The translations under genes were made by a program, and so were the position numbers. Shown here piece after piece: positions 28,487-52,476 of a stretch of 64,000 nt of DNA. The stretch covers positions 435,457 through 499,456 of the forward strand of contig MU054831.1 in NCBI GenBank assembly GCA_013239625.1. Reading direction: 5' to 3'. A model generated the notes under the pieces. It saw only the letters and a list, made by a program, of their open reading frames with translations, was not told the DNA's origin and searched no databases. Each line of letters starts with the position of its first letter. The stretch's first letter is position 1. Origin of the DNA: Lama guanicoe. Lineage: Eukaryota.

Positions 28487-28541
28487 TCAGCTGGCCTGGG
28501 GGACTCCCACAGGACCTGGGACAGGGCACAGGAGCAGAGGC
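28487..28541 (-). pseudogene. ANO7: Probable ANO7 terminal coding exon remnant
   Basis: Acceptor cctcag followed by sequence ending VPQAS*, resembling human VPKAS; weak similarity. Confidence 0.4.
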
Positions 28542-28770
28542 CTGAGGCGGCCAAGGGCCTGGCAACTCTGGGCCAGAGGGCCAGGGACTGGGCTGTGGCC
28601 TCTCCGCGGGTGAGCCTCGGACCGCTCCCCATCCCTCTGCCCCCAGCTGGGCTTGGCTGCAGGCCCCTCAGCTGCGGGTCTCCGATGAACCCTGTGACCT
28701 TGGAGGGAGGGTGCTGGGGAGGCCCTGCTGGCTGGCTCCTGGCAGCCTAGGCTTGTGGGCCCAGACTCAC

Positions 28771-28821
28771 CTCTGAGCCTGAGGGCTGGTCCACTTCGCC
28801 TCCGTCTGGTCCAAAAAGAGC
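28771..28821 (-). pseudogene. ANO7: ANO7 exon ~24 remnant
   Basis: cag|ALFGPDGGEVDQPSGSE|gtgagt, similar to human VLFGTNGTKDEQPEGSE. Confidence 0.8.
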
Positions 28822-28919
28822 CTGTTTCCAGGAAAGGGCAGAGGAGGAGGAGAGTGGTTGGACGGACTCCTCACTCCCTCGGGACGGCAGCAGGGCGCCA
28901 GGCTGGGGTCGGCACTCAC

Positions 28920-29019
28920 CTCATTCCCGGCCAGCGCCTGCTCGGCCAAGCAGCACTCCCATTTCACCTCGATCTCCACAGACTCAGGGATGTTGGGGAC
29001 CACAAGGTCGAGGACCCGG
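28920..29019 (-). pseudogene. ANO7: ANO7 exon ~23 remnant (~20-nt 5' deletion)
   Basis: cag|C RVLDLVVPNIPESVEIEVKWECCLAEQALAGNE|gtgagt; HVVFSVG missing. Confidence 0.88.
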
Positions 29020-29493
29020 CTGGCGGGAGCAGGGCTGGTGTGAGTGGTGGGAGAGGGCACCCCCACCCCTGGGCAAAACAAGTGCCTGAGTGGCCTTCAT
29101 GGGGCCAGGGGTGGGCACCTGCTCCCCAGGTGTGGGCTGAGCTGGACAGCAAGCATCAGTGCAGAAAAGGAAACTCCTGGGAGAGGCAGAGGCCATGGCC
29201 AGAGACTGGCCAGAGACCACCCCAGCTCCAGTGGGACGCTCTGCAGTGCCCAGAGCATTCTGATGTCCACACAGTGGGCGACAGAGGCCAGCAGGGAAAT
29301 GAACATGCAAAGAACTGTGAGCTGACCCAGGTGGCAGAACGGTCAGCACTGGGCCCCGCGCCCTTGGTCATGCCGACCCCCACACACCACACGGCGAGGT
29401 CAGGCAAAGCACTGTGGGCGTGGGGACCACCGCGCTGAGGCCAAGAGCGCCAGTGGGGGACATCGGCGGAAGAGCTGAGAGGTGCCTCGGTAC

Positions 29494-29566
29494 CTCACAC
29501 ACGATGACGAAGGCCAGGCAGACGGCTGGGGAGCGGTGTCCCGCATCCTCCCTGGAAGCCTGGCAC
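29494..29566 (-). pseudogene. ANO7: ANO7 exon ~22 remnant (18-nt deletion)
   Basis: cag|G CQASREDAGHRSP------AVCLAFVIVCE|gtaccg; TYWNLL missing. Confidence 0.88.
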
Positions 29567-30049
29567 CTGCAGGGGACGTGGGGCTCCGGGCGCCAGATGC
29601 GCCTCTCAGCTTCCTCGCCGCCTCCCTCACCCGTCCTGAGATTCTGGGCCTGGCTCACCACTGAGGGTGTGTGAAGTGGACAATGTTCCCAAACAGGCTG
29701 CTCTGACAGCACCTTCAGCTTTACCTTGTTGGGGTTTCAAACAGGTAGATGGGCTGGACTGTAACTGAGCCCCACAGTGGCAAACGCCTCATTATCTGGT
29801 AGGTGTGACAGTCCCATAAGTCCGTGCTCCAACAGGTAATGTCAACCCACTTAAACCATGAAAGTGTGCCTTCACGGGACCAGCGGCCACTCTGCCAGAC
29901 ACTGCCCACCCGCCCGCCCAGGGAGCTGCCCAACTGTCACAGCGTGACATTGGGCTTTGCTGCTGTCCGTGTTGCAGGAAGGTGTGACGTTCCATTTTGT
30001 GCCATAGACTTACACGTTGCACTCCTTGGAGAGCATTACCGGGACCAAG

Positions 30050-31650
30050 TTTGCAAGAAAAAAAAACAAAAAATCTTGAAAATAAAAAATACCATCATTG
30101 AGAAAAACTCCTCAGCAAGCAGGGTAAACTTTAAGTGGCTAACTAGACACAGCAGAGCACCATGGGAGCCGGGGACAGTCATGAAGTCGCCCTGCATGCA
30201 CAGAGGGTCACAGAGATCAAAAGGCAAAAGCACTCCAGACAGGTGGAGACATGAGGAGGCCCCAGCAGACAGGGACTTCTGGAAGGGAGGCTGGAAGGGA
30301 GTGTGGAGAAGCATGTTTGAAGGAATAAAATGAGTTGTTTCTAGAACAAAAGAAGAAATCACTCCAGAGCAACAGCACATTGAGTCTCAGCGAGAAACTT
30401 CTGAAAAGAACCGAATCTGTTGGTGATGCGGATCAAAGGAAATGAGAAAAAACTTAAATGCTACAAATGCCTCTGGCAAGAAAAGCCATGTCACAAAAGA
30501 GTAATATTTAGAAGGAGCCTAGGGAAAATATCCCTTAACCCAGAATTTCATACCTGCTACTTGGAGAACAAAGATGGAAATATTTTCAGACATGTAAAAA
30601 CGAACATACATGTGAGTTCACCAGCCACAACATTCCTATAAGAGCTACTAAAGGATCAACTTCAGAAAGAAGAAAAACGAACCCAGAGGGACAGCAATGC
30701 CTAAGAAGCTAGTGTAGCCACAGACGTTAATAAAATATACCAAAGAGTTGGGATTCACAAATGACTGAAAATGTTTTGGTGTGTTTTTCTAATAGTAAAG
30801 TTAAAATTAAGAAGGCTGACGTAGTGGATATGTGTAGAACCTTGCTCCAAAATCAATAAAGATCCTAAGCTCACCTGAAACATGCAAAAGTCTATTGTGA
30901 CCACATCATAAAGGAAGACTCATCGAATGAGAGACTTACATCACATCAACTCCCCCCTCTCCCCCCAAGTAATTCAGACCAAAGTCAATGATTTTTTTTT
31001 GGTAGCATATCAGTGTTTTCCAAGTTGAAAATCTTTTAATGATTCATTCTTCAGTGACTCATGTAACACCAGGAATTAAACACTAACATTTTCATGACTA
31101 TCATAGATTAATTATTCTGATGGTAAATAACTGTTCTCTAGGGTAAAAAAAAAATACAATGTAAATCACAAATATTTTAAAACTAGAGGACACGGATGAG
31201 TCAAAACAAGGATACAATTTACCAAGAATGATCTAGAAGTGGAAATTTGATATAAAAATGATCTCAGAGCCAATCAGAAAGGTAAGGATTTATAGCTGAA
31301 ATGTCATTAAGGTCAGATATAAAGATTCCTACATTAATGGTGTTTTAAGTAGCAAAAAGGAGAAACTCCACCTGTTTGAGAACTTAGTCTTCTAAATAAT
31401 TAATGGATAAATAGGCAAATCACAATTGGAGTGATGAAATATTTCAGAAGTAAAGGAAAGAAGTATTAAGTGGAACGGAGGTTTTAAGCAGTACATTCAA
31501 ATAAATGTATAGACAAAAATTTGTTTATTAAAGCCCAAGAAAGTCTGAAAACAAATGAGTCAACTCCAGAAAATTGCTTTTTAAGAGGAAAGAAAGGATA
31601 GAAACTATCTGGAAAGAAAGTAGGGCCACAGCTACAAGAACAGGAGAGCC
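30050..31650 (+). mobile_element. A-rich ancient L1-like block in ANO7 intron
   Basis: Abrupt A-rich composition; ORF1-like cccagaatttcatacctgc motif. Confidence 0.45.
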
Positions 31651-31819
31651 TAAGAAAATCGTGAGAGTATGACGCGCACGTTTGTGTCACTGCGCCCTAA
31701 AGCTCATTTGAAACAGTCTTCTGCGAGAAGTAAGTACCAGAACTGACTCGGGAAGAAACAGGAAAAGGAAAGAAGCCTGGACCCATGAAAAGAACGGGGC
31801 TGGTACTCACGGCCCCTAC

Positions 31820-31986
31820 CCGCACCACCGCGGTCCCCGGGGTCCCCGCACGGCGGGGTCCCCGAGGCGGGAAAGGGGCGCGGGCCCCGCAGGCTGTGCC
31901 CCCACGCAGCGGCGCAGGGCGCGGGCGCTGGTCCGGCCGGAGGGGGCGCGCGGCGGGAAGTCGCACAACAAGGCCGGCAGGGAGGC
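31820..31986 (-). pseudogene. ANO7: ANO7 exon ~21 remnant (heavily degraded)
   Basis: cag|ASLPALLCDFPPRAPSGRTSARALRRC, similar to human AFLLAFSSDFLPRAYYRWTRAHDLRGF; 3' end approximate. Confidence 0.7.
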
Positions 31987-32061
31987 CTGGGCGGTCTGCG
32001 GGTCAGCGCCCCTCCCCGCCCGACCCCGCGCAGTCGCCGGGCCCCGCCCCAGCGCGCTCAC

Positions 32062-32223
32062 GTTGCCGGTGACCGCCAGGTGCGTGACGCCCGCCAGGAC
32101 GTGAACCCAGACGCCGGCGCTCGCAGACGAACCTGAGCGCGTCCACCCAGTTGTTGAGCGGAGCGAAGAGCGGCGCGAGCGGGCGGGCGGCCACGAAGAT
32201 GGTGATGAAGCCGAGCTGCAGCG
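32062..32223 (-). pseudogene. ANO7: ANO7 exon ~20 remnant (12-nt and 32-nt deletions)
   Basis: LQLGFITIFVAARPLAPLFAPLNNWV----DALRFVCER-(32-nt deletion)-GVWVHVLAGVTHLAVTGN|gtgagc; 162 vs 206 nt. Confidence 0.92.
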
Positions 32224-33506
32224 CTGCGGCGGACGCGAACAGTGTCACCCACCGCCAGGACCCTCCGCCGGCCGCGGCCCGCGAACCATGACTCCTGCCC
32301 GCCCGGCTTCAGCTGGTGGTAAGGGCCACCCGCGCCTGCAACCGATGGCCAACAGTGCCCACCGTAAACCCTGACATCGCTTTTCCGGGAGCCCTTGGGA
32401 GCACCCCTGCCCATCAGCAGGGTCCCAGCCTCTGGTCACTCCTGCAGACTCAGCTGCAGGGCCCCTTCCCTCAGGAAGCCTCCCCTGACTGCTCTCACAG
32501 AGCTGGATGCGTTTCTGGCTGGACATTCAGCCTCCTTATGTAACTGTCCTCTCCGGTGCTTGGCCCACCCTGTGGGCTCCTGGCAGGAGCGACAACAGAA
32601 CCTGCTTCCGACATTAGGGCTGATTTTAGGAAATGGCTCCTTGAAAGGACGTAAAATTCCTAAGGAAAACATCAGGTCCCATTGCCTGTTGTCCAATGGA
32701 GTGGAGACACAAGGTCCACCCCATGCACGTTATCATGGAAAAGCGTGTGTCTCCCTTGTGAACTCTTCTGCCCCCTGTCATCCATAGAACAATGCAGCTA
32801 CTGTCACCCTTTTTGCTTTGGCTGCCAGGGAGCTCAGGGCAATGCATTGGCTTAGGTGCAGCCCTTCAGATTAAGAGTGTGCCATCATTCTTTCTCCTCT
32901 GTTATCGAAGAGTAAGACCCTGGCTGCAGGGACTGGTGTCTACACTGGGCACAGACCCTGCCCTCAAAAAGTGCAATTGCCCCATGTGGGGAACAGCCCC
33001 TACCTGGCAAGAACACGTGCTGAGGGTCAGCCAAGAGTGTGGGCATCGAGAAACTGTCTAGAGAATATCAGCTCCCCAGGCCTATCGCCTCCCAGGTGTA
33101 GCCTTGCCTCTCGGGGTTCCTTAGCCCCCAGGGCCTGAGCACCCCACTTCTCACTCCCTACAGGAGGCTCTGGCCCAGGCTTTCCTGGGTAGGGGAGATT
33201 AAGGCCACTGCAAGAAAGCCCCATCAACTGGCCCCAGGTCTTTTTCCAAACCCTTGTGCCCAGGGTGCTGCCCCTTCCTGCCCTCAGCCAACCTTTCTTG
33301 AGCACTCCCCACTCTGGCCTCCTCAACTCCTTTCCTGATCTTTGTGGGCCTTACTCCACCAGGGAACCTCTGTCATGCTCACCCCTACAATCATGCTTCA
33401 AGGTAGATGAAGACAGGAATGCTGAGGCTGAAAGCCTTTCGGGTGTGTGGCTGCCCCTCCCACCCACGGTGATAGCCACGGCTGCCGCCACCACTAGGGC
33501 GCCTAC

Positions 33507-33652
33507 CCATCCCTAGATATTCGTCAAACAGGTCCTCGCAGGGTAGAAGTTTGTAGTCCGCCTCCCAGGGCACCTGGCCAGCCACCATGGAAGCCCCCAC
33601 CCTCCTCTTCTTGGAGCGGAGCCAGAATTTCTGCCACCAGTCCTCTAGCTTC
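33507..33652 (-). pseudogene. ANO7: ANO7 exon ~19 remnant
   Basis: KLEDWWQKFWLRSKKRR...PWEADYKLLPCEDLFDEYLGM+G|gtaggc; EYLEM changed to EYLGM. Confidence 0.92.
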
Positions 33653-34743: not shown

Positions 34744-34841
34744 GGAACAAGAATCTCCTGCACGTTGTTGATGATCTGCTTTCCCACTGTGATGACCAGG
34801 AGCTCCTGTGCCAACTCAATGAGGCAGCCTCCAGCTACACA
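34744..34841 (-). pseudogene. ANO7: ANO7 exon ~18 remnant (open, TM6)
   Basis: cag|CVAGGCLIELAQELLVITVGKQIINNVQEILV+CC|gtgaat. Confidence 0.92.
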
Positions 34842-35495: not shown

Positions 35496-36459
35496 AACTG
35501 AAGGCTGCCGGGCTGATGTGCATCGTGTGCAGTCATGGCCCTGAGTTGTGGTCCCATCTGCCCTGTCCCTAGAAAGCCCCTCCCCTCTTGTGGGAAAATG
35601 GAGAGTGTCCCTTGGGGGCAGCCACTCTGCAGGCAGCTGTCAGGCTGGGTCACAACCCAGACCCATGGGAGGTTGCTGTTCTCCCTCCTTCTTCATCAAA
35701 AAGAAGAGGGTCTTTGAGGTGAGGTGCTCAGCAGGAGCTGTTGGACCCCCACCTGTGTCCCCTTGGCCAAGCCCAGAGGCCACTTGTGGACTATTCCAGA
35801 CACAGCCACTCATGCTGCCTCAGGGCGAGCCTGGCCCTCCGCCAGTGAGGAACCAGATGAACCGGGACAATCTGGGGGGTTTTCTACAGTGTCTCAGAGA
35901 GTCTGCGCAGGGTTGAGCCCACACGTCCTCAACGGCGGCCCCGCACTTAAGTGCTCGCAGGTGCACCTCCTCCTGCCATCCTCCTCCGTTTGCATGCTTC
36001 CCGGGGTGACACCTCCACCAATTATGCGCACTCCAGTCTGTTGGGGTCAGCTTTGGGGGCACCCCACACACAGTGATGCTTCGTTCTGCACAGAAGCAGC
36101 TTCTGCTTCTTGAAAAAGCAGGCTCACACCTGGCTCTCAGAGCTGCTGGGCCACGCAAGGGAGCCTGCTGTGCTGGCGGGGGTGGAGGGGGCCAGCCCGG
36201 GAGACGCTGAGCCCCGGAAGGGCCGCCAGCCCCTGCACGCAGTGTGCCAGCCGAGTTCGCGGCAGCGGCATTGCCTCACGGTCCACCCCGATGACTGGAG
36301 CTCCGCTCAGGTGGGAATCGGGAGCCTCTGGGGACACGCGGATTGTGAGTGTTTTGTGGACGGCTGCGAGGGGGCAGAAGCCGTGCGAGGAGGCCGGCGT
36401 GGCGGTCCTAGGGGGCAGGAAGGGCCGTCAGCGGCTAGGGCCGGTCTCCGCGGGCTCAC

Positions 36460-36514
36460 CGCCTGGTTGCGGACCCCAAGCAGGATGTGGCCGTTGCCCG
36501 GATAGCCCACGAAC
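36460..36514 (-). pseudogene. ANO7: ANO7 exon ~17 remnant
   Basis: cag|G FVGYPGNGHILLGVRNQA|gtgagc; human ends RNEE. Confidence 0.9.
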
Positions 36515-36830
36515 CTGGGGGAGAATCAAGGTCCAGAGGCAGCGCGTGACCAGCCCCGCCTGACGTCGGGCCGCGCTCGCCGCACCTGTGCTCCCGCGGC
36601 CACCCGGAGACCACCTGGCGAAGCGCGAAGCGGGGCGGGGCCTGGGGTGGGCGGAGACAGATGGGGGGAGGTGGCCCGGCGGCGTGGGGGCGTGGCCAAG
36701 GCGGGTCGCGCGGGTAGGGCGTGGCTGAGGTGTGGGGGCGTGGCCGGATAGGTCGTGGAGGGGCGGGGCGGGATGTAGCTTGGGGCGGGGCAGGGCGGGT
36801 CGCTCCGAGGGCGGGGCCCAGGGCGCTGAC

Positions 36831-36930
36831 CTGCCCTTGCAGAAGGCGATGCAGATGGGCCAGGAGCAGGAGTTGATGAACACCTCGAGGGGGAAGGCGT
36901 CCTCGAACTTGGTCTGGGTCCGATGCATCT
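36831..36930 (-). pseudogene. ANO7: ANO7 exon ~16 remnant (12-nt deletion in TM5)
   Basis: EMHRTQTKFEDAFPLEVFI----NSCSWPICIAFCKGR; FQFV missing. Confidence 0.92.
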
Positions 36931-37021
36931 CTGTGGCACAGCGAGATCCCGTCGTAAGACCACCTCACCCATGCAGAGATGGGGAAAAGGTCCGGATATT
37001 CTAAAGAAATTCTTTCAAGAA

Positions 37022-37778
37022 AAAATGCTCAATATCACTAATTATCAGAGAAATGCAAATCAAAACTACAATGAGGTATCACCTCACACCAGTCAGAATG
37101 GCCNNNNNNNNNNNNNNNNNNNNNNNNNNNNNNNNNNNNNNNNNNNNNNNNNNNNNNNNNNNNNNNNNNNNNNNNNNNNNNNNNNNNNNNNNNNNNNNNN
37201 NNNNNNNNNNNNNNNNNNNNNNNNNNNNNNNNNNNNNNNNNNNNTTACCATATGACCCAGGAATCCCACTCCTGGGCTTGTATCCAGAAGGAAATCTACT
37301 TCAGGANNNNNNNNNNNNNNNNNNNNNNNNNNNNNNNNNNNNNNNNNNNNNNNNNNNNNNNNNNNNNNNNNNNNNNNNNNNNNNNNNNNNNNNNNNNNNN
37401 NNNNNNNNNNNNNNNNNNNNNNNNNNNNNNNNNNNNNNNNNNNNNNNNNNNNNNNNNNNNNNNNNNNNNNNNNNNNNNNNNNNNNNNNNNNNNNNCATTC
37501 TAAGTGAAGTAAGCCAGAAAGAGAAAGAAAAATACCATATGAGATCGCTCATATGTGGAATCTAAAAAACAAAAACAAACAAACAAACAAAAACAAAGCA
37601 TAAATACAGGACAGAAATAGACTCATGGACAGAGAATACAGACTTGTGGTTACCGGGGCGGTGGAGGGTGGGAAGGGATAGACTGGGATTTCAAAATTGT
37701 AGAATAGATAAACAAGATTACACTGTATAGCACAGGGAAATATACACAAAATGTTATGATAAATCACAGAGAAAAAAA
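37022..37778 (+). mobile_element. Young 5'-truncated L1 (ORF2 C-terminus and partial 3' UTR) with 19-bp TSD; contains two N gaps
   Basis: [17 protein letters not shown]...LPYDPGIPLLGLYP...ILSEVSQKEKEKYHMRSLICGI; perfect TSD aaagaaattctttcaagaa at 37003-37021 and 37779-37797. Confidence 0.92.
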
Positions 37779-38554
37779 AAAGAAATTCTTTCAAGAAGGG
37801 GCAACGTGTGGCATTCCTGGATTTCTTACCTCAAAACCATCTAAAAACGTTCTGTCGGTAAAGGAGGAACTGGGGCAAGAGATTCTAGGAAGTCACATGA
37901 TGTAGCTCAGTGGGGCAGACAGGGCATAGTTGTGGGGGCCTGGGCAGTGGAGGTGCCCAGGAAGCAGGTGCTGAGATGGAGGTGGGAGCATCAAAGGTTA
38001 ACCGGAGGTAGCACCTGAGACCAGAAAAGGGGGACACAGCCCCACTTGCAGGAACACTGAGTGGCTCCCCCAGGGCCCTGTCCCTGGGTCCCCTCACCTG
38101 GAGCCTCTCCCTGGGCACCCACCCACCTCCCACTGCCCCCCTCCATTTTGTCTGCAGAATGCTGCCCACCCCACCCTCCTCCCTAGGTGTGCTCTGAGCT
38201 CTGTCCCTCTCCTAGACCAGGACTGCAGTTTGTGGGATGGATGGATTGGCTCATCAGCACTCGTCCTTAGGAAATGGAAAGGGGTCTGAGGAAGGTGTGG
38301 TGAGGCAGGCGAAGAGGGGGAAAGAGAGGACTCACCTGCGAGGGGCAAGGATTCCTGTTGACCCAGGGTGAGGCCTGGAGTACCCAGGAGGGCCACTTCC
38401 TCTCCCGCCATCAAGGCCCTGCTCACTGCTATTGGAGGGACTTTTGGGGGTGGATGTGACATGTCCCATCTGGGCCTCGTTCAGACATGAAATAAGTCGT
38501 GTTCTGATGTGATGCAGCTGGGCTGGGTCAGTGCCAGCCAGCCTCGGCACTCAC

Positions 38555-38663
38555 CCCATTTTGTCAGGACATGGGCCAGGGCCACGGCCACATAGGTCTT
38601 GGAGAGGATGAGGGTGAAGATGAGGTTCAGGATGGACCCCATGAGGCTGGTGATGCATGACGA
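38555..38663 (-). pseudogene. ANO7: ANO7 exon ~15 remnant (6-nt duplication)
   Basis: cag|SSCITSLMGSILNLIFTLILSKTYVAVALAHVLTKW+G|gtgagt. Confidence 0.9.
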
Positions 38664-38754: not shown

Positions 38755-38853
38755 CCAGGCTGTGAGGAGCGTGTTGTTTGACCTGGACACCAGGATGGCC
38801 AGGATGGCCCTGTACAGGATGACGGACACCAGGCACATGACCACCACGGCCAC
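38755..38853 (-). pseudogene. ANO7: ANO7 exon ~14 remnant (open)
   Basis: cag|VAVVVMCLVSVILYRAILAILVSRSNNTLLTAW|gtgagc. Confidence 0.92.
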
Positions 38854-39523: not shown

Positions 39524-39660
39524 CATCGTCATGACCACCACGGAGCCGGCCAGCACCGGCACAGGCGGCTCCTCTTGGGGAAGTAGGGCTCGTCCTCACC
39601 GGCGGTGGGGCTCAGGGCTGTTGTGGGAGCTGAGGCGGCCACCTGAGGCCACGGCCTCTC
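39524..39660 (-). pseudogene. ANO7: ANO7 exon ~13 remnant (-1 frameshift)
   Basis: ERPWPQVAASAPTTALSPTAGEDEPYFPKRSRLC-(fs)-VLAGSVVVMTM|gtgagg; 137 vs 138 nt. Confidence 0.9.
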
Positions 39661-39719
39661 CTGGAGGGAAGCCAGTGCTCAGCGGGGGTGCGCGCTCCGT
39701 GAGCGACCAGACCACCCAC

Positions 39720-39867
39720 CACGATGTCCTCACGGTTGGAGCAGCCCCAGGGGTGGGCCTGCATGGTGCTCTTGCACTCCAGCATCCCAAGAGGACACGG
39801 CCCACAGCGCCATGAACAGGCTGAAGAAGACGGTGCCACCATGGTCGTGGTCCAAGGGCTGGCCAGC
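39720..39867 (-). pseudogene. ANO7: ANO7 exon ~12 remnant (frameshifted)
   Basis: AGQPLDHDHGGTVFFSLFMALWAV, two 1-nt losses, then ...WGCSNREDIV|gtgggt; 148 vs 144 nt. Confidence 0.9.
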
Positions 39868-41138: not shown

Positions 41139-41234
41139 CTGGACCAGGGCACAGGCGCTGGAGAGCAGCCAGAAAGGGCAATCATGGCAGAGCAGGCACA
41201 TCTGGAAGCTGCCCTGCTGCCACACAGCTCCTGC
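41139..41234 (-). pseudogene. ANO7: ANO7 exon ~11 remnant (-1 frameshift, GAG acceptor, GC donor)
   Basis: QELCGS-(fs)-GSFQMCLLCHDCPFWLLSSACALVQ|gcacga; 96 vs 97 nt. Confidence 0.9.
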
Positions 41235-41690
41235 CTCAGGGCGGTGGGGGCGTGCTGTGGGCGCCATGGAGGGCCTGCCCTCCCCTTGCCCTCTCCCTCC
41301 CCAGCACTTCTTTTAAAGATGTGCACCATGATGATTTTTAGGTAACTTTTGGAAGTTTCAGCTCCACAATAGGGTAAAACGCAAGCCAGTCATTTATTTA
41401 TAAAAAAAGCTTACACTATTGTAAGAAGCAAGGACGAGTGCCAGTGACACTAGCCTGAGAATACAGCTGTCCCCCTGTCAGTCCGGGGGCACACCTGTCC
41501 ACCTGTGTCCGCTTGGGAACAGCCGGTCTACGTACCAGCCTTTCAGCCAAGTCCACAGGGCCCCCCGTGCCACCCTGTGGGCAGGGGTGTGCTCAGTGTG
41601 CACCTCCGTCCCCAGCTCTGCACAGGGCCTGCACACCCACCTCAGGAGACACCGGGGAGGCCTGGGAGCTGAAGGGGAGAGGACACTTAC

Positions 41691-41786
41691 GTAGGTGTGC
41701 CTGAGAACACCACGAAACAGCCCGCCAGGAACACCACACCAGTGTGCCCACCACTGCTGCTGGCAGGAGCCAGCCTGTGCAGAGCC
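41691..41786 (-). pseudogene. ANO7: ANO7 exon ~10 remnant (5-nt duplication)
   Basis: LCTGWLLPAAVVGTLV[TGGTG duplicated]FLAGCFVVFSGTP|gtaagt; 96 vs 91 nt. Confidence 0.9.
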
Positions 41787-43221: not shown

Positions 43222-43386
43222 CGAGCCAGGTGAAACGGGCAGCCGTCTTCTCCCCAGGCACCGGCGCACCTGGTCCAGAGGCTGGTGCTCGTTCCACTGG
43301 TGCCCGCGGGCCCAGCGCTGGAGCAGCACCTGTTGCTGGCTGAGGCCCAGAGCCCGCGGACTCTCTAGGGGCACCACCAAGGGGCC
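43222..43386 (-). pseudogene. ANO7: ANO7 exon ~9 remnant (-1 frameshift)
   Basis: GPLVVPLESP...QPLDQVRRC-(fs)-GEKTAARFTWL+G|gtgagt; 165 vs 166 nt. Confidence 0.9.
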
Positions 43387-44363
43387 CTGGGGATGAGAAG
43401 CCATCGGGCAGGGAGATCCCAGGATGGTCCGGGCATCCTCCCCCACCAGACACTATTCTAGGTCTGGGGGCTTCAGCACCCCCACTGTGGGCAGACGGCC
43501 AGACAAACCCCGGGACTCAGGACTGCTGAGGACAAAAGGGTCACGCTGGGGGCTGGCGTCCAGGAAGGCCCCTCTGAGGAGCGCACATCTGTGTTAAGCC
43601 CCCTGGCCTGGGGCTCCCAGGTTCCAGGTCCAGGGCAGTGGAGGGGCCTGGAGGGCGGCCCTGGGAGGAGCTGGTGGCTGTGGTCAGTCGGATCCGTGTC
43701 TCCAGGCAGGGATCTGGCAGTCCCTGGCCATGGCCAGGCCAGTGGGGCAGGCCGTCCCGGCCCCGGCCAGCAGGGAGAGCATGCCCCTGGGTGAGGGGGT
43801 GCCGGGCGTGGGCACTGGGCCACTCCCTGTGCACGCCCTCACTGACCCCTCGGTGGCATCTCAGGGTCACACAGCAGTGGGTGGGGGACTGACCTGGGGC
43901 CCTTAGGCCCCGTCGCCCCTCCCTGAAACTCTGAGGGCCTCATGGTGGGCGGCTGCAGGGGCAGGGAGTCAACAGCCTCCAGACCCAGAGGGGGGACATT
44001 TTGTCAGGGGTGATGGTAAGGCTGACGAGTCTGGTACTGTGGCCGCTGGCGAGGTGAGCACCCCTCCCTGGCGATGCCTCGGTTTACCTCGCTATGTGAC
44101 AGGCACATGAGACCTCCCCCTCCTCCCTGAGAGGGAAGCCGCCCAGGGAGACTGGGCCCGTGGCGGGCGCGCCGCAGGCCACACCGGGCCCAGTCATGCA
44201 CAGGGGTGCTGCTGACCACAGCTGCCGTCGTGGGAGGGCAGGGCCCGCTGCCTCACATGCCTGGGCAGGACCTGGGTTCCTCCTCATCCAGACACTCACC
44301 CTCTGGCAGCAGCCTGAGCCTCCCGCCCCAACCCAGCTGGGCCCCTCCGGCCCCAGGATTCAT

Positions 44364-44474
44364 GTCGTGCAGGGGGAGGGCTGCGCTGAAGACAGCCTCC
44401 CCCAGCAGCTGGTTGATCCCAAGCAAGCCTTTTTTCTTGTGGCCATAGGGGGTCTTGGCCAGGATCTCAAACAG
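44364..44474 (-). pseudogene. ANO7: ANO7 exon ~8 remnant (dead donor)
   Basis: cag|LFEILAKTPYGHKKKGLLGINQLLGEAVFSAALPLHD|atgaat (GT to AT). Confidence 0.9.
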
Positions 44475-45301
44475 CTGGGGGTGGTGGGGAAGGCACCAGT
44501 CACAGGACAGCGGGGCAGGGACATCCTGGCCCTCCTGTCTTGGGACTCAGCCCACGGGTGGCCTCTTGGGGCCCCTGGTGACAGCGGTGAAGACACACCC
44601 AGGTCCTGCTCATGTCACCGGCCCACATGGCACGACCCCTCTTTGTAGACGGGAGGCCTTGGCTCACGGCAGTCATGTCTGGGTTTGAACCCACGCCCTG
44701 GCCAAGCGCAGCCCACTCTGCATGGACCCTCGGTCTGGGCAGGGGTCAGCCTCCACCTGGAGGCCTGTCTTGGGGGGGCCTGGCCCCTGAGGGGCAGCCC
44801 ACGTGGCCTGGGCCTTCGGTTGTCAGCAGCCGGTTCTGCTGGGCAGTCCCATCCCAGCCGCTGCCCCAGCACAGGCCCCCGGGGGGCCCAGCTCTGCCCG
44901 CCCCTCTCAGGCTGCTGCAGCTGCTGGTCTGCTCTGGCCCTTGGCTCCCTGCCTCACTGGCCAACAGGGCCCCCCGCCCTCTGGCCCAGCAGTCTTGGCT
45001 GTCTGTCCCACAAACCCTTGAATGTGAGACCCAACTGGGTCCCTTGGGTCCCCGAGAAGCACGGGCCAGCTCTGCCTTTGCAGCCTGGGGATGTGCTCCC
45101 CTTGTGGAGAGAGGAGGGGTGGCCTCTGAGCCTCTGGCCCCACCTTGGGGTCTCCGGCCGGGGACACTGTCCCTCTGGTCAGTATGCAGAAAGGTCTTCC
45201 TGTATCCACGGGGGCCTCTGCTCCCGGGGGGCAGAGTTTCTGGGGCTGCAGCCTTTCAGGCCTGGGTCAGGGCGCGGGGCTTACGGCAGGACCCTGCTCA
45301 C

Positions 45302-45360
45302 AATGTGGTGCCTTGCAGGTGCTGGGGAAGAAGGCGTCCAGGTCGCCACTGCCGAGGACC
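45302..45360 (-). pseudogene. ANO7: ANO7 exon ~7 remnant (+1 frameshift)
   Basis: cag|G VLGSGDLDAFFPST-(+1)-RHHI|gtgagc, similar to human FLGSDNQDTFFTSTKRHQI; 59 vs 58 nt. Confidence 0.82.
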
Positions 45361-46278
45361 CTGCAGGGTGAGGGGCGCTGGGCCCAGGCCTACCCCATGC
45401 CTCGGGCCGCAGCCGCGGGCCCTGGGCAGCACGGGCAGCTCCCGTTGTGCCTCTTCTTTCCCAGAGGCAGGAGCACACGGCAGGTTCTCTGGCTGCAGCA
45501 GAACCCCTCACAGGGCAGAAGGAGTGGACTGCGCTTGGGCAGAGGGTCCCATGGCCACCTGTGTGTCTCCTGAAGCTCCGAGCTCGGGGCCACAGGCCTC
45601 TCTCTGGGAGGTGTCTGATGGTGGCCTGTGTGTCCAGAATGTTGACCCGAGGGCCCTCCCTGGGACACCAGAGTCTTGGGAAGCCCTGGGGTAGGGCAAA
45701 AGTGAGGAAGGCTGAATCTCCCCCCAGCCCAGAAAGCAGGTGTTCTCAGCGTGGGCAGTGAGACCCTGAGGGAGTTTCTGGTGCTGGTCACCCACGCGGG
45801 TCCCCACCAGGCCTGACGCCGCCCTAACCTGCATGCTGGCTGTGGCTGTGTGACTCGCTTTGGCCAGTAACAGGTCCATGGAAGAGGCGTCTCCAGCGGG
45901 GCCTCCAGGAGCCAGTGTGGACACGCCACCTGCACTTTCTGTGTGAGAGGGAACCTCCACCCTCCCGGGCCCACCCACCACAGACCCATGGCTGAGCAGG
46001 AAGCGGAGCTCTGAGTCCAGCCACTGAGCTGGGGGGTGCTCGTTCCACACCACAACCTGACTGTTCTGACTGATACGATGACACGTAGGTGAAGCGGACA
46101 TGCATTGAGAGCTTGCACACCTGGGACTGATGGCCTCTAGTTGAAAAGCTCTGGAAAGGAGCGTTTAGGCGGAGAGCCCCACATTTTAGTTCTCACTTGT
46201 TCCTTCTTCATCCCTGGTTCTTCGTCAGGCCTGGGACCCATGTGAGTCTGCCCGGCTGGCCGGGTGGGGCCATCTCAC

Positions 46279-46415
46279 CTTGACAGCTTACTGGCTGTGA
46301 ACTGGCAGGAGTAGGACTCGGGGGACACGTCAGGCACTTCCTCCAGAAGGATGTTGGAGACGCCCAGCTGCTCCAGTGGGCTGGCCATCCAGTTGGAGGC
46401 CTGGCTGGGCAGCTC
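46279..46415 (-). pseudogene. ANO7: ANO7 exon ~6 remnant (open)
   Basis: cag|ELPSQASNWMASPLEQLGVSNILLEEVPDVSPESYSCQFTASKLS+AG|gtgaga; 137 nt. Confidence 0.88.
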
Positions 46416-47087: not shown

Positions 47088-47195
47088 CTGCAGGGGCAGC
47101 TGCAGACGCAGGTCCTCTGCGCCAACAGCAGAGCACGGACCGGGGGCGCCGAGGAGGAGGTAGTGCACTGCGCTCTCCTCATCCTGGACGTCACG
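47088..47195 (-). pseudogene. ANO7: ANO7 exon ~5 remnant
   Basis: cag|RDVQDEESAVHYLLLGAP...AEDLRLQLPLQ|gtacct; apparent internal -1/+1 indel pair. Confidence 0.85.
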
Positions 47196-48035
47196 CTGCG
47201 GGGACAGGGGCTCTGTGAGAGCCTGGGGCACACGTGGGCTTGCACATGCATGTGTGCGCAGGTGTGGTCATCTTTATGAACTTGTGTGCACATGTGAGTG
47301 TGCACATGTGTATGTATGCCCATGAGTGTGTGTGTCCTTTCACACTCAGGAAGAGAGGCTTCCTGTAGCCACGGTGGCAACTGACCAGCACTGGTTTTAA
47401 ACTATTTGATGAATGACAAGTTCCTTCTGTGGTCCTGCTCCAGGAAGTCGACTGTCAGGGCTGCTCCTGTTTGGAAGTCAGCCAAGGAGGGACAGACAGA
47501 CACCGCGAGGCTGCCAGCTGCCCCCCGCCCCCGCCGGTGCCTGCAGCACGCTGACCTCAGTGGGAAGTAAACCCAGCTGCTTCAGTGAACAGCGTCTCGG
47601 CCTTCGACAAGCCACCAGGTATCCGGGGGCGTTACGCACATGTGATAGAAGTGAGCACATGGCTGTGCAGATGTGGGTGGGCATGGCAGTGCACACGTGT
47701 GCAGACGTGACAGGCTCTCCCGGAGCCCAGAGGGGCAATTTTCATTTCCAGGGTCTGCTGTCTCTCTGTGTGCACCTGCTTCCCAAATCAGTGATTCTCA
47801 GCCTCAGGGGTTCCCTGACTGTCCTGGGCCAGATGCCTGCTTCGGCAGGAGGAGATAACCTGGCCTGCGGTCAGTGGTTCCGCAGCTGTAGGGGGCTCAG
47901 GGAGGAGGCCCCCCGCAGGACTCTGGGGCTTGATCTGTTGCAAGGCTCTGGACGCCACACCCTCAGGCCCTGTGGGGCAAGGTCACAAATCACTGAACGA
48001 GTGCAGAGCCAGGGCCTACAACCAGCCCCACGTGC

Positions 48036-48175
48036 CTGCTCCACGTGCAGCCCAGCCGCAGGCAGCTTACCCAGGAAGGCGCGCCCCCCGCCCCTGCACG
48101 CCCGTCTTGTCCAGGGTGGCACTGTCCTGCTGCTGACCCTACCTCAGGTCTTCCCCTTGAAGGGCATCTTCCAAA
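48036..48175 (-). pseudogene. ANO7: ANO7 exon ~4 remnant with stop, frameshift and GC donor
   Basis: EDLR*GQQQDSATLDKT (TAG at 48139-48141), 2-nt loss before AFLGKLPAAGLHVEQ, donor gcacgt; 5' boundary not recognisable. Confidence 0.8.
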
Positions 48176-48699
48176 CTTCAGGGCAGGACAACGGAGCCCA
48201 AGAGGGGCAGAGGCATTGCTGGGGGAGGCGTGGTCAGAATTAGGGGCTGCGAAGGGCCCTGGGCTTGAGGGGCGTGGAGGGGCCAGAGCCACAGGCCTGT
48301 GAGGAAACACTGGGCCCTGGCTTGCTTACACACTGAGGCAGCTAAGGGGCTGGTGGACACCAGAGACCCCCTGGAACCGCGGCCAGACAGAAAGGAGGGA
48401 GACTGCTGCGCACCCTGGCTTTCCAGCTGAGGCTCCCGGGCCGTGCCCCAGGAGCACAGTCTGTGCCATAAGAGTAAGAAACGCGCCTTAGGAAGGAGCG
48501 CGGAACTGAAGCAGGCCTGTCCCAGCCCCCAGAACCGAGCTCGAGCAGGCCCAGGCGACCTGCCGGTCACCTGGCTGCCTTTCAGAACAAAACAGCACTG
48601 TATGGGAAGTTCACAGAATGAGCAGAGGCAGACCCAGAGATGAACCATACAGCCAGCAGAAGATGGCTATAAATAATGTCAGTTATTAAGTCAAAAGAG

Positions 48700-50050
48700 G
48701 AAAAGGAGTAAAGAATGGAACAAATGGTCTGAGTAACAATTGGAACATTTCAAGAGAGAATTAGAATTTATGAAAAGGATTCAAACGAACATTCTGAAAC
48801 AGCAGAACACAGCGTATGACATTAAGAACTCGTTGGACAGGTTTCATAATAGACTAGACTCAACAGAAGACAGGGCTGCCAAACTTAAGGCTAGACCAGT
48901 AGGAAAGTGAAGCTCAGAGGAAAAAGAATGGAAAGAGCAGAGCAGGGTGCAAGGCGGTCGCGGTCACGGTCAGAGGGCCAACAGACTGCCCTGAGAACCA
49001 GGAGGGAGAAGGAAGGACGCGACCTGTGAACATGAATGTTTCCAAATGACGGAATAAAGCAATCCAAAGACTCAAAATGCTCAATGACCCCCACACAGGA
49101 TTTAAAAACTGACACGTAGGAAAACCATGGTATAGCGTAGCTTTGCTGTGTTATAGACAAGGCGAGATCTTAAAAACAGCAGGAGAAGCAGCACTAGTTA
49201 CAGCAGCCAAGACATGGAAGCACCTCGACGGTGCCCGTCGACAGATGACCGCATAGAGAAGATGTGGTGTGTTTATACAATGGAGTACCACTCGACCATA
49301 AAAAGAACGAAATCACGCCATTTGCAGCAAGATGGTTGGACCTAGGGATTGTCATTCTAAGTGAAGTAAGTCAGACAGGGAAAGACAAGAAGCATATGAT
49401 ATCACTTACACGTGAAATCTTAGAAAAAGATACAAATTTTATTTACAAACCAGAAATAGTCTAGAGGACATAGAGAACAAACTATGGTTACCAGTGGGGA
49501 GGAGGGGAGGGAAAAATGAGGAGTTTGGGATTAACAGATACACACTACTGTATATAAAATGATAAACAAAAAGGACCTCCTGTACAGCACAGGGAACTAA
49601 ATTCAGTATTTTTCAATAACCTATAATGGGAAAGAATCTGAAAGAAAAAGTGTGTGTATGTACGTATCTGCACAACTGAATCACTTTGCTGTGCACCTGA
49701 AACTATCATTGTACATCAACTACACGTCAATAAAAAATAAAATTGGAAAAAACAGCAGGAGGAAAAAAAAACCACATTATTTTTCAGGGGAACAATAACA
49801 ATATAGGCACAGGCTTTCCCAACTGAAACAGTGGCGGCCAAGACAGTGGACTGACGTCTTTAAAGTGTTGGGGGAAATACTGCAAACTAGAATTCTTTAT
49901 CCAGTGGAAATGCTCTTCAGAAATGAAGGCTAAATGAAGACATTCTCAAACCTTCAAAATCTGAGGGATTTTGTCCCAGCACATCTGCTCTACTGGAAAC
50001 ACTAAAGGAAATTCTTCATGAAAGACATAATTGCAGGTGGAAGTGCAGGT
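48700..50050 (+). mobile_element. Old L1 ORF1 remnant interrupted by a nested L1
   Basis: RILYPVEMLFRNEG*MKTFS resembles the L1 ORF1 C-terminal motif; A-rich. Confidence 0.7.
49186..49747 (+). mobile_element. Nested L1 3' end with 14-bp TSD
   Basis: KKNEITPFAARWLDLGIVILSEVSQ, 3' UTR and aataaa; TSD aaaaacagcaggag at 49172-49185 and 49748-49761; tt/aaaaa target site. Confidence 0.88.
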
Positions 50051-50109
50051 GTGCAAGGATGGATGCACAGACCACGAAGGACGAATACACAGTGAGTGGA
50101 AAGGACAAC

Positions 50110-50390
50110 TATGTGAGTTCATTGCTGCATTAATCACAATAGTCAAAAAAAGGAAACAACCCAAATGCCCATCATAAACCCAGAAGTGGAATTGCTGGAT
50201 CACACGTGGCAGCTCTGGGCTTAACTTTGGGGGACCCACCGTGCTGTCCTCCGCGGCAGCCGCACCAACCCGCGTTCCTGCCAGCAATGCACGAGGGGCC
50301 CGATTTTTCTGCATCTTCACCAGCACCTCTTTTCTGTTTTGTTTTTGTAGCTGTTGTGGTTGTTTAAAGAACAACCATCCTGGTGGGTTC
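50110..50390. mobile_element. Juxtaposed + and - strand L1 ORF2 fragments
   Basis: ttcattgctgcatt...ggaaacaacccaaatgcccatca (+) joined to cccagaagtggaattgctggatca (-). Confidence 0.65.
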
Positions 50391-50789
50391 GAGCTTGGGG
50401 TGTTTACTTCTCACATGGGTCTTCCTGGTGCTGCGTGGGGAGTGGCATTGGCCAGGGGGAGCACAGGTGGGCGCGGCTGCAGGCCCCTGGGGAGATGTCG
50501 GTGGCTTGGGGCAGACGGGGCAGTGGGCTGGGGAGTGAGGAGGTGGGCCGCTCTGTCTGTGGGGAACCCCTTCCTGTGTCTCCCGGGCGTGTCCTGCCCA
50601 CCCCATCCTCCAGCACAGCAGCTGGTGCTGGCGCTGGCTCAAGAGGTGCCGTTGGGTGAGGAAGGGGAGGCCTGGTCACTGAGGACGGTGACCTGGGCCA
50701 CTGTCCTCCTGCCACCCGTGGGCGCCCCACCTGTGTCCCCACCCCCAGCACCAACGTGGGCACAGCTGGCAGATACTGGGAGGGGTCAC

Positions 50790-50847
50790 TGATCCAGGGC
50801 TTGGCAGGGCTTCCCACCTTGTGGGCGGCCACCTGGTGTCCACCTGG
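50790..50847 (-). pseudogene. ANO7: ANO7 exon ~3 remnant
   Basis: cag|PGGHQVAAHKVGSPAKPWI+A|gtgacc, similar to human PGGQQAAACRAGSPAKPRI. Confidence 0.8.
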
Positions 50848-51653
50848 CTGGAAGGAAGGGACAAGGAGTGGTGGCGTCTGGCCACATGGGCAGACACGCT
50901 TGGGGGAGGGCCAGCTGGGCCCTCTCCAGCTGCTCCAGGGGCTGCCACGGCCGCCGAGCGCCCCGCCTGGGCTGTGGGCCGGGCTAGGTCTGAAGGCAGC
51001 CTGGGCAGGACCCAGGGGTGCCCACTGTGCAGCCTCCAGAGTCTGGAGAAGAGCTGGACGGCCCCTCAGTGCCTGCGGACAGGCCAGAGGTGGTCACAGC
51101 CCTGGAAGTGGAACCCTTCGGTTTCTAGACGTTCCAGGTGAGTGAGGCCTGTTTCTCTGAGGCTCAGAGCACCTGTGTTGTGGGGGGCAGGGAGGGGGGC
51201 ACCTTCCACTCTCAGGCCATGGGGGGTGGGCAGCACCCTGGAGGCAGAGGGGGGCCCAGGAAGACCAGGCAAGAGGACACTCCGCAGCAGGGCCTCTGGG
51301 GTCTGGGGCCCAGCATCTCCCCCAGCAGCCTCCGCTAGGGTGTCTGTGGACCCCAGGGATTGGGGGGAGCCCCTAGAGATGGACTTGGGGAAAGAAGGCC
51401 CACAGCAGGTGGGGACTTTTCTGCAGGCCCCAGGAGGTGTGTCCTCCTCTGGGTTTGACCCTGGGGACAAGGCTGACTGGGGGAGAGCCTGAGGCACGGA
51501 CAGAGGCCTTCAGGATCCTTGGGGCCGCACAGTGGCTGCCCTGGGCCCTGGGGATCTGCTGGAGCCTGAGACAAGGTTGGGCCTAGTGCCCTCACCCCAG
51601 CGCTTTTAAAAAGGCATCTGGGCCCCAGGGTGACCCGAATCCCCATGCCATCA

Positions 51654-51791
51654 CTAACCTGGACCCTGACTCTTACGTTGGCCTAAACCTACCCCATCAT
51701 AACCTCACCCTTCCATAGCGCTGACCCTCACCCTCTCTAGCCCGTCTACAATTAACCCGCACCCGCACCCTGACCCCGACCCTGACCCTGA
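51654..51791. repeat. Degenerate telomere-variant hexamer array
   Basis: CCCGCA CCCGCA CCCTGA CCCCGA CCCTGA CCCTGA, preceded by decayed CCCTAA-like units. Confidence 0.6.
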
Positions 51792-52366
51792 TGCGTGCAT
51801 CTGCCCCGGGATCGGGCCCTCCCCATCACCTGTGTGCTGACGACCTGGCAGGCAGCAGAGAAGCAGACGCAGCCAGTGCCCGCTCTCCACCCAGACCTGA
51901 CTCCAGTCCTCTCTGCTGTGCTCGCTCAACCCCAGAGGGTGCAGCCCGCGTCCCTGCTCCTCCCCGGGCCCACCTGCTGCCCCTGGGCCCTTTCAACCCT
52001 CAGAACAGGTAGTCGTGTTGTAAGAATTACGGTTTCAACACACGTTGCACTGATCCATTGCTCTGCAGCCCCTTGCGTCTCCCCTTGCTGGTGGCTCACT
52101 GGCCTCCCTGGAGCGGCCTCATCTGGCCTGTCCCGGGGATCTCTGCTCATCCCGCAGGGTGGTGGCCCGACAGTGAGGGTGAAGGACATCCCCTCTCCCA
52201 TCGCTGGGGCAGCTGAGGGTTTGGGGGTTGCTGAGGAGCAGGAGGGAAGACCCGGTGGGTGTTGCAGGGGCCGCTGTCCCCAGGTCCCTGTGTCCCCTTC
52301 ATACACCTACAGCAGACTGAGCCTGGGCTGGGCAGCAGGGCGGGGGGCCGGGCAGCGGGTAGCTGC

Positions 52367-52476
52367 CTCTGCGGCTGGCTATGCTCCCGTAGGAGTCCCC
52401 CTTCTCTGGCCCGGGGACCACGCTGGTCAGGACAGCACCGCCCTCTTCCGGGACCTGTCTGCGCAGCATCCTGCTC
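52367..52476 (-). pseudogene. ANO7: ANO7 exon ~2 remnant (ATG at 52469)
   Basis: cag|GAGCAGG ATG: MLRRQVPEEGGAVLTSVVPGPEKGDSYGSIA, similar to human MLRRRAQEEDSTVLID...GSYGSTA; donor appears to be GAG|gcagct, 3' boundary uncertain. Confidence 0.75.

What the first reader, a model, noticed from the sequence alone, without database searches (positions are those of the whole stretch)
28487..52476. ANO7 (prostate TMEM16G scramblase/channel) appears to be a unitary pseudogene in this probably camelid genome
Seen in sequence: 24 ANO7-like exons in syntenic order carry many independent lesions. These are an in-frame TAG (48139-48141); frameshifts in the exons near 48.1, 45.3, 43.3, 41.7 (5-nt tandem duplication), 41.2, 39.8, 39.6, 32.1 (32-nt deletion) and 29.0 kb; a GT-to-AT donor at 44363; and in-frame deletions of 12, 12 and 18 nt. 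The 24 adjacent HDLBP exons have no lesions, which argues against sequencing noise. Established: ANO7 is prostate-enriched and a prostate-cancer risk gene in human. Inference: a lineage-specific gene loss, i.e. a natural knockout; any link to camelid seminal physiology is speculation. I cannot tell whether this loss is already published.
Basis: partly seen in the sequence, partly recalled or inferred. Interest (0 to 1): 0.8.

Follow-up and report, generated by a model that had tools for sequence, protein, structure and literature searches.

The report
Dead ANO7 gene in a camelid
The gene for the prostate membrane protein ANO7 sits in its usual place between PPP1R7 and HDLBP in this genome but is riddled with a stop codon, many frameshifts, broken splice sites and a wrecked calcium site, so the animal is a natural ANO7 knockout: a solid but fairly ordinary gene loss.

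Summary
On the minus strand of 52.5-28.7 kb I mapped 23 ANO7 exon blocks in order. Most keep canonical AG/GT splice sites. The locus lies between an intact PPP1R7 last exon and KH-domain (HDLBP) exons.

Alignments with four intact ANO7 proteins give the same lesions:
- a TAG at 48141-48139
- nine net frameshifts, including a 5-nt tandem duplication and a 32-nt deletion
- a GT-to-AT donor at 44363
- in-frame deletions of 12, 12 and 18 nt
- badly decayed C-terminal exons

Apart from the indels, the conceptual translation is changed at 58 of 299 positions that are invariant in 23 intact tetrapod ANO7 proteins (intact species: 0-13). Two calcium-binding glutamates are gone.

The assembly gap lies inside an intron and hides no exon.

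The 31-mers of 39.5-45.4 kb do occur in 20 runs of four organism labels.

I could not test for a second copy elsewhere or for sharing with Old World camels. Hints suggest the loss is wider in Cetartiodactyla.

The scan noted this same stretch once before (s1-857061).

Verdict: a genuine unitary pseudogene, of moderate interest.

The parts
52373..52520 (-). ANO7 exon 1. The open frame runs from 52520. The ATG of the conserved MLRRQ start is at 52469. The upstream MTSE-type start reads VRSE here. There is no GT donor near the expected end.
50790..50847 (-). ANO7 exon 2 (GGHQVAAHKVGSPAKPWISD). The conserved DFVLVWE end of the exon is not recognisable.
48036..48155 (-). ANO7 exon 3. It has an in-frame TAG at 48141-48139, a frameshift in a G run at 48087-48090, and a GC donor (CAG|gcacgt).
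47088..47195 (-). ANO7 exon 4. A -1/+1 pair at 47141 and 47121 scrambles seven codons (WAVLCYY reads GPCSAVG). The net frame is kept.
46279..46415 (-). ANO7 exon 5. The frame is open and the AG/GT sites are intact.
45302..45360 (-). ANO7 exon 6, with a +1 insertion at 45317 that is not in a homopolymer.
44362..44474 (-). ANO7 exon 7 (hits Pfam Anoct_dimer). The frame is open, but the donor at 44363-44362 is AT instead of GT.
43222..43386 (-). ANO7 exon 8, with a -1 deletion at 43257 inside the invariant YFGEK motif.
41691..41786 (-). ANO7 exon 9, with a 5-nt tandem duplication (TGGTG TGGTG) at 41739-41735.
41139..41234 (-). ANO7 exon 10, with a -1 deletion at 41215. My aligner reports a GC donor. 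I did not examine it further or send it to any search tool.
39720..39867 (-). ANO7 exon 11, with two -1 deletions (39795, 39775) and two extra codons (39858-39850).
39524..39660 (-). ANO7 exon 12, with a -1 deletion at about 39561.
38755..38853 (-). ANO7 exon 13, intact.
38555..38663 (-). ANO7 exon 14, with a +6 in-frame insertion at 38591-38586.
37104..37495 (.). Two assembly gaps (37104-37244, 37307-37495) inside intron 14. The flanking exons are consecutive in every reference protein.
36831..36930 (-). ANO7 exon 15, with a 12-nt in-frame deletion at about 36881-36875 (FVFQ lost). Conserved F and Y residues are changed.
36460..36514 (-). ANO7 exon 16, frame open.
34744..34841 (-). ANO7 exon 17 (Pfam Anoctamin positions 246-277). 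It is intact and keeps the NNVQE calcium-site residues.
33507..33652 (-). ANO7 exon 18. The frame is open, but the invariant EYLEM reads EYLGM. This is the loss of the glutamate equivalent to TMEM16A E705.
32062..32223 (-). ANO7 exon 19 (Pfam Anoctamin positions 334-374). A 12-nt deletion at 32144 removes EIRL, which includes the TMEM16A E734 equivalent. A 32-nt frameshifting deletion lies at about 32111-32119.
31911..31986 (-). ANO7 exon 20. It is in frame but heavily substituted, with a GC donor.
29494..29636 (-). ANO7 exon 21. The recognisable part is 29583-29494, with an 18-nt deletion at 29527 and a 3-nt deletion at 29578. The 5' half is in another frame or beyond recognition.
28920..29040 (-). 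ANO7 exon 22. RVLDLVVPNIPESVEIEVKWECCLAEQALAGNE is clear. The first seven codons are barely recognisable, with a probable +1 shift and CA in place of the AG acceptor.
28747..28821 (-). ANO7 last coding exon. It ends ...SLGPQA followed by TAG (28749-28747), at the same place as the armadillo and humpback proteins.
57172..57345 (-). Last coding exon of the upstream neighbour PPP1R7. It is intact, 55/58 identical to the solved PPP1R7 chain, and has its stop codon.
4864..23650 (+). KH-domain exons of the downstream, convergent neighbour HDLBP (vigilin), uninterrupted.

Best explanation
This is the orthologous ANO7 (TMEM16G) locus, decayed into a unitary pseudogene.

Shown:
- Gene order and orientation are PPP1R7 > ANO7 > < HDLBP.
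- 23 exon blocks lie in order, mostly with canonical splice sites.
- There is a premature TAG in exon 3, at least nine uncompensated frameshifts spread over eight exons, one destroyed donor, several in-frame indels, and degenerate C-terminal exons.
- Two of the acidic residues that hold calcium in TMEM16 proteins are lost.
- One in five otherwise invariant residues is replaced.

Inferred:
- No anoctamin can be made from this locus. Any transcript would meet a stop within about the first 80 codons.
- Selection on the gene was relaxed tens of millions of years ago. I estimate roughly 25-60 My from the 19% change at invariant codons and about 20 indel events, using textbook mammalian rates.
- At that age the loss should be shared by all living camelids.
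For: Identity as ANO7:
- Exon 18 alone retrieves only ANO7-type proteins from 1.84 billion representatives (full-length hits are named anoctamin-7).
- Exons hit Pfam Anoctamin and Anoct_dimer.

Synteny.

Lesions:
- Four references give the same lesions; the null scores are.
- Most indels are not in homopolymers.
- Splice-site table, including GAC|atgaat.

Loss of constraint:
- The translation is 71% identical to hippo, where hippo-rhino is 89% over the same codons.
- 58 of 299 invariant positions are changed, against 0-13 in each of 23 intact species.
- EYLEM reads EYLGM and EIRL is deleted, mapped to TMEM16A E705 and E734.

Independent data: 31-mers of 39500-45400 are held at 0.78-0.98 by 20 DNA runs of 4 organism labels and 7 studies.
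Against:
- The shared 31-mers only bound the problem. A run holding 0.98 of the words can lack at most about half of the eight lesions in that stretch.
- Two lesions (48087-48090, 47141) sit in G or C runs, where assemblies err.
- A genome-wide search for a second copy was not possible.
- No RNA data were examined.
- Exons 5, 13, 16, 17 and 18 still have open frames and good splice sites.
Confidence: 0.9

Rival explanations
1. The lesions are assembly or sequencing errors in a GC-rich, hard-to-sequence region, and the real gene is intact.
For: - The window has assembly gaps in this gene.
- Two indels lie in G or C runs.
- No reads could be laid.
Against: - Seven of the nine net frameshifts are outside homopolymers, and they include a 5-nt duplication and a 32-nt deletion.
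- The TAG, the AT donor and 58 replacements at invariant residues are substitutions, far above any assembly error rate.
- The neighbouring PPP1R7 and HDLBP exons are clean.
- Short-read contigs of 20 runs hold 78-98% of the 31-mers.
Confidence: 0.02
2. This copy is dead, but an intact ANO7 (a segmental duplicate or a retrocopy) exists elsewhere in the genome, so the animal is not a knockout.
For: Nothing positive. It simply could not be tested here, because no tool searches this genome as a whole.
Against: - The dead copy occupies the ancestral position, with both neighbours in place.
- No camelid ANO7 protein is among the 120 best relatives of hippo or armadillo ANO7 in a collection that includes NCBI and UniRef.
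- The scan's notes on 585 windows of this genome mention no other ANO7.
Confidence: 0.04
3. The locus is still used in a reduced form: a transcribed pseudogene or lncRNA, or a short N-terminal product like the human short ANO7 isoform.
For: - Most splice sites and polypyrimidine tracts are still canonical.
- Exon 1 keeps an ATG.
Against: - Exon 3 carries both the TAG and a frameshift, so even a short N-terminal product is cut.
- The exon 1 and exon 2 donors are unclear.
- No expression data were obtained.
Confidence: 0.04

Closest known systems
Intact mammalian ANO7/TMEM16G (hippopotamus P0067, donkey P0035, cat P0030, armadillo P0016)
   Same: - Same exon order and intron phases.
- Same neighbours.
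- Same C-terminal stop position.
- Pfam Anoctamin and Anoct_dimer signatures.
   Different: - A stop codon, frameshifts, a lost donor and in-frame indels.
- 71% instead of about 85-89% identity.
- Two calcium-site glutamates lost.
ANO7 pseudogene proposed for oscine and galliform birds (PMC6679542)
   Same: The same gene is lost at a conserved syntenic position in a whole lineage.
   Different: - In birds only a few 3' exons could still be aligned; here nearly all exons are still recognisable.
- That case rests on missing models and ESTs, this one on mapped lesions.
Humpback whale 'LOW QUALITY PROTEIN: anoctamin-7' (P0123)
   Same: - A cetartiodactyl ANO7 changed at 41 of 295 otherwise invariant positions.
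- It has altered calcium-site residues.
   Different: - I only have the annotator's repaired protein, not the DNA, so its lesions were not mapped.
- Whether any lesion is shared with this locus is unknown.
Human ANO7 loss-of-function alleles (splice variant rs77559646, PMC9239746; African protein-truncating allele, PMC11319200)
   Same: Disruption of splicing or of the reading frame of the same prostate-restricted gene.
   Different: Those are single polymorphic alleles linked to prostate-cancer risk. Here the gene is fixed and decayed throughout.
TOP1MT unitary pseudogene reported by this scan in the same genome (note s1-862669)
   Same: Same kind of event in the same genome: a gene in its usual place with stops, frameshifts and broken splice sites.
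   Different: It is a different gene, and I did not check that note.

Membership tests
ANO7 (TMEM16G) ortholog | Sequence belongs to the anoctamin family (Pfam Anoctamin PF04547 and Anoct_dimer PF16178). | tested here: met
   Tested exon by exon. PF04547 gave E 1.6e-08 (exon 19) and 5.8e-06 (exon 17). PF16178 gave E 1.7e-06 (exon 7). Single exons are short, so two of these three are under the whole-protein cut-off.
ANO7 (TMEM16G) ortholog | Closest to ANO7 rather than to the other nine paralogs. | tested here: met
   In one search, all 15 hits of exon 18 are ANO7-type; the full-length ones are named anoctamin-7. In some searches the alignment runs from end to end with four ANO7 proteins. In one search solved ANO1 and ANO6 match exon 19 much more weakly.
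ANO7 (TMEM16G) ortholog | Conserved position between PPP1R7 and HDLBP, convergent with HDLBP (order in human recalled from my own knowledge). | tested here: met
   The PPP1R7 last exon lies at 57172-57345 on the minus strand. KH_1 and KH_Vigilin exons lie on the plus strand at 4.8-23.6 kb.
Functional TMEM16 protein | Intact calcium site: the acidic and polar residues of helices 6-8 (TMEM16A N650, E654, E702, E705, E734, D738; residue roles recalled from the TMEM16A structure papers). | tested here: not met
   The E705 equivalent is Gly (EYLGM) and the E734 equivalent is deleted with EIRL. Both are invariant in 23 intact ANO7 proteins. The N650/E654 equivalents are kept.
Functional TMEM16 protein | Continuous open reading frame across all exons. 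| tested here: not met
   There is a TAG at 48141-48139 and at least nine net frameshifts.
Unitary pseudogene | Several independent inactivating mutations at the ancestral locus, with intact orthologs in other species. | tested here: met
   Intact orthologs are listed.
Unitary pseudogene | No functional copy elsewhere in the same genome. | not testable with these tools
Unitary pseudogene | Lesions present in raw data of several individuals (fixed, not an assembly error). | tested here: inconclusive
The only evidence is the share of 31-mers, 0.78-0.98 in 20 runs, 4 organism labels and 7 studies.

The most novel reading that the evidence does not exclude
ANO7 loss is not a camelid peculiarity but recurrent across Cetartiodactyla. 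Camelids and baleen whales, and perhaps ruminants, pigs and toothed whales, would each have let the gene decay while the hippopotamus kept it. That would point to an order-wide relaxation of whatever ANO7 does in the male accessory glands.

Support so far is indirect:
- Hippo ANO7 finds rhino, horse, bats, cats and even reptiles among its 120 best relatives. It finds no ruminant, pig, camelid or dolphin protein, and only a decayed 'low quality' humpback model.
- A 2010 survey lists only a 685-aa cow model, and no alpaca ANO7 (four alpaca entries, all other anoctamins); the shown and read parts name no dolphin ANO7.
- 'ANO7' hardly ever co-occurs with cattle or pigs in 8 million papers.
Probability: 0.4. 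Interest if true: 0.5.

Novelty: new member of a known kind. Interest (0 to 1): 0.35.

Why it matters
ANO7 is restricted to prostate epithelium in humans, is a prostate-cancer risk and prognosis gene, and its function is still called unknown (PMC7877177, PMC9239746, PMC11319200). A mammal that has lived without it for tens of millions of years shows that the gene is dispensable for male fertility in that lineage. It also offers a natural knockout for comparison.

If the loss proves recurrent in cetartiodactyls, comparing their prostate secretions and membranes with those of hippo, horse or carnivores could point to the gene's role.

For genome annotation, it warns against repairing this locus into a 'low quality protein'.

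Tried and rejected
- Pfam scans of start-codon-delimited ORFs on both strands near the stated places found nothing. Those ORFs were in the wrong frames or missed the short exons. Motif and composition scans then located the exons.
- A metagenome scan for the 5-nt duplication junction gave 0 hits.
- An exact look-up of five window ORFs found none in the collection.
- A word search with the 142-aa ORF spanning the 32-nt deletion found nothing. So I obtained no independent camelid sequences.
- Solved-structure search with exon 18 alone gave only chance hits. Its calcium-site residue was placed through exon 19's alignment and exon contiguity instead.
- Literature searches for a published mammalian ANO7 loss found none. 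Only the avian case turned up.
Searches were exon by exon, by reference.
- I considered that the -1/+1 pair in exon 4 might be an alignment artefact. The DNA supports it, but because the net frame is kept I do not count it as disabling.
Full report
**What is there**

The anoctamin-like exons lie on the minus strand. Motif and composition scans first picked up LQLGFITIFVAARPLAPLFAPLNNW near 32.2 kb, GCLIELAQELLVITVGKQIINNVQEILVP at 34.8 kb, and a clean AG...GT exon at 33652-33507. That exon alone, searched against 1.84 billion representative proteins, returned 15 hits. All are ANO7-type, and the full-length ones are named anoctamin-7 by their sources. Exon-by-exon Pfam scans give Anoctamin (PF04547) for exons 17 and 19 and Anoct_dimer (PF16178) for exon 7.

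**Position**

Upstream on the same strand, at 57172-57345, is the last coding exon of PPP1R7. It is 55/58 identical to the solved human protein and ends in its stop codon. Downstream on the plus strand, at 4.8-23.6 kb, ten ORF pieces hit KH_1 or KH_Vigilin without interruption. This is HDLBP, convergent with ANO7. The order PPP1R7, ANO7, HDLBP is the human 2q37.3 order as I recall it. So this is the ancestral locus, not a dispersed copy.

**Exon map and lesions**

I wrote a spliced, frameshift-tolerant protein-to-DNA aligner. I ran it on the minus strand of 53500-28000 with four references: hippopotamus (P0067, residues 159-1015), donkey (P0035), cat (P0030) and armadillo (P0016) ANO7. The hippo score is 2247, against 272 and 281 for the reversed and shuffled protein.

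All four references give the same 23 exon blocks and the same events:
- TAG at 48141-48139
- a frameshift in a G run at 48087-48090
- a -1/+1 pair at 47141/47121
- +1 at 45317
- -1 at 43257, inside the invariant YFGEK
- a 5-nt tandem duplication (TGGTG TGGTG) at 41739-41735
- -1 at 41215
- -1 at 39795 and -1 at 39775, plus two extra codons
- -1 at about 39561
- +6 at 38591-38586
- -12 at about 36881
- -12 at 32144
- -32 at about 32111-32119
- -3 at 29578 and -18 at 29527

The splice-site table shows canonical AG and GT at most exons, which supports the exon bounds. The exceptions are:
- GAC|atgaat at 44363 (G to A at +1)
- GC donors at 48035 and 31910
- no donor near the end of exon 1

Three segments cannot be recovered in frame:
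- the FVLVW end of exon 2
- the first half of the exon at 29.6 kb
- the first seven codons of the exon at 29.0 kb, where there is a probable +1 shift and CA where the acceptor AG should be

The last exon ends in TAG at 28749-28747, exactly where the armadillo and humpback proteins end.

**The assembly gap**

The N runs at 37104-37244 and 37307-37495 lie between exon 14 (38663-38555, ending ...LTKW plus one base) and exon 15 (36930-36831, starting with two bases and MHRTQ). The two exons are consecutive in every reference and share a split GAG codon. No exon can be hidden in the gap, and no frame argument depends on it. I did not try to fill it.

**Is it noise?**

Seven of the nine net frameshifts are not in homopolymers, and two of those seven are a 5-nt duplication and a 32-nt deletion. 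The TAG and the AT donor are substitutions.

I mapped the matched codons onto an alignment of 23 intact tetrapod ANO7 proteins:
- The conceptual translation is 71% identical to hippo, where hippo and rhino are 89% identical over the same codons.
- It differs at 58 of 299 positions that are invariant in all 23. Each intact species, tested leave-one-out, differs at 0-13, mostly 0-4.
- Exon 19 aligns to solved mouse TMEM16A so that the 12-nt deletion removes E734-L737. By exon contiguity, the Gly in EYLGM stands for E705.
- Both glutamates are invariant in the 23 intact ANO7 proteins. They coordinate calcium in TMEM16A; I recall that role from the structure papers and did not test it here.

The neighbouring PPP1R7 and HDLBP exons are clean.

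The sampled 31-mers of 39500-45400 are held at 0.78-0.98 by 20 DNA runs from four coded organisms and seven studies. Two runs of different organisms hold 0.98, and at most one of them can be the source of this assembly. The eight lesions in that stretch account for about 4% of its 31-mers, so such a run can lack at most about half of them. This is a bound, not a per-lesion check.

**Mechanism and age**

The locus cannot encode an anoctamin. The frame is cut from exon 3 on, and eight exons are shifted. The scaffold of helices 3-8 carries deletions, and the calcium site is broken.

The age is inferred, not shown. A 19% change at codons that are otherwise frozen corresponds to about 0.22 amino-acid-changing substitutions per codon. 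At textbook mammalian neutral rates (about 1.6-2.2e-9 per site per year, somewhat higher in GC- and CpG-rich DNA) this needs roughly 25-60 million years. About 20 indel events in about 2.6 kb of coding sequence point the same way. I therefore predict that the loss predates the split of Old and New World camelids.

**Wider pattern (a lead, not a finding)**

- With hippo ANO7 as query, the 120 best relatives include rhino (91%), horses, bats, cats, primates, rodents and even reptiles and birds at 68-72%. They include no ruminant, pig, camelid or toothed-whale protein.
- The only other cetartiodactyl is a humpback 'LOW QUALITY PROTEIN'. It is changed at 41 of 295 invariant positions and at calcium-site residues.
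- Models shorter than about 590 aa are outside that search's length range. A repaired camelid model at about 70% identity could lie just under the list's cut-off.
- A 2010 family survey lists only a 685-aa cow Ano7 model; its four alpaca entries are all other anoctamins.
- 'ANO7' co-occurs with 'cattle' in 2 papers and with 'pigs' in 3 papers of 8 million, none about a livestock ANO7 gene.
- ANO7 has been proposed as a pseudogene in oscine and galliform birds (PMC6679542).

**Novelty and score**

I found no paper reporting an ANO7 loss in camelids or any other mammal. Genome-wide gene-loss catalogues and NCBI pseudogene calls may already contain it, and those could not be consulted here.

It is a new member of a well-known kind, the unitary pseudogene. 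It matters moderately, because ANO7's function is still unknown and the gene is of clinical interest in prostate cancer (PMC7877177, PMC9239746, PMC11319200).

That the genome is camelid (alpaca or llama type) comes from other notes of this scan. I did not test it.

I made no joined or repaired ANO7 model for any search. All searches were exon by exon, by reference.

Noticed in passing
window 57172-57345 (-): Intact last coding exon of PPP1R7 (SDS22), 55/58 identical to the solved human chain and ending in its stop codon. About 4.7 kb separate it from the start of ANO7 exon 1.
   Followed up: yes
window 4864-23650 (+): HDLBP (vigilin) exons with complete KH_1 and KH_Vigilin domains. I found no interruption in the ten pieces scanned, but the full exon set was not checked against a reference.
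   Followed up: partly
protein P0123 (humpback whale 'LOW QUALITY PROTEIN: anoctamin-7'): It is changed at 41 of 295 positions invariant in intact ANO7, including calcium-site residues (GHLEM, IYNVQE, LNDW). It also carries an intron-like insert. ANO7 looks decayed in a baleen whale too.
   Followed up: partly
(lists of ANO7 relatives): No ruminant, pig, camelid or toothed-whale ANO7 is among the 120 best hits of armadillo or hippo ANO7, although reptiles at 68% identity are listed.
   Followed up: partly
protein P0077 (wolf ANO7): The canid ANO7 differs at 13 of 312 otherwise invariant positions and is only 80% identical to hippo, the most divergent of the intact placental sequences compared.
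   Followed up: no
window 44612-45694 (+) and 47413-48243 (+): Long plus-strand ORFs (360 and 276 aa) lie antisense to the ANO7 remains. They have no Pfam match and are most likely a by-product of 62-66% GC.
   Followed up: partly
window 30001-32000, 36001-38000, 48001-50000: AT-richer blocks (GC 0.42-0.48, against 0.6-0.66 around them) lie inside ANO7 introns, one of them around the assembly gaps. They are probably interspersed repeats.
   Followed up: no
window 31987-32061 (-): The intron between exons 19 and 20 is only 75 nt. Downstream of the 32-nt deletion it is open in frame, so the 3' part of exon 19, the intron and exon 20 lie in one 142-aa ORF (31819-32244, which also runs on past exon 20).
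   Followed up: no
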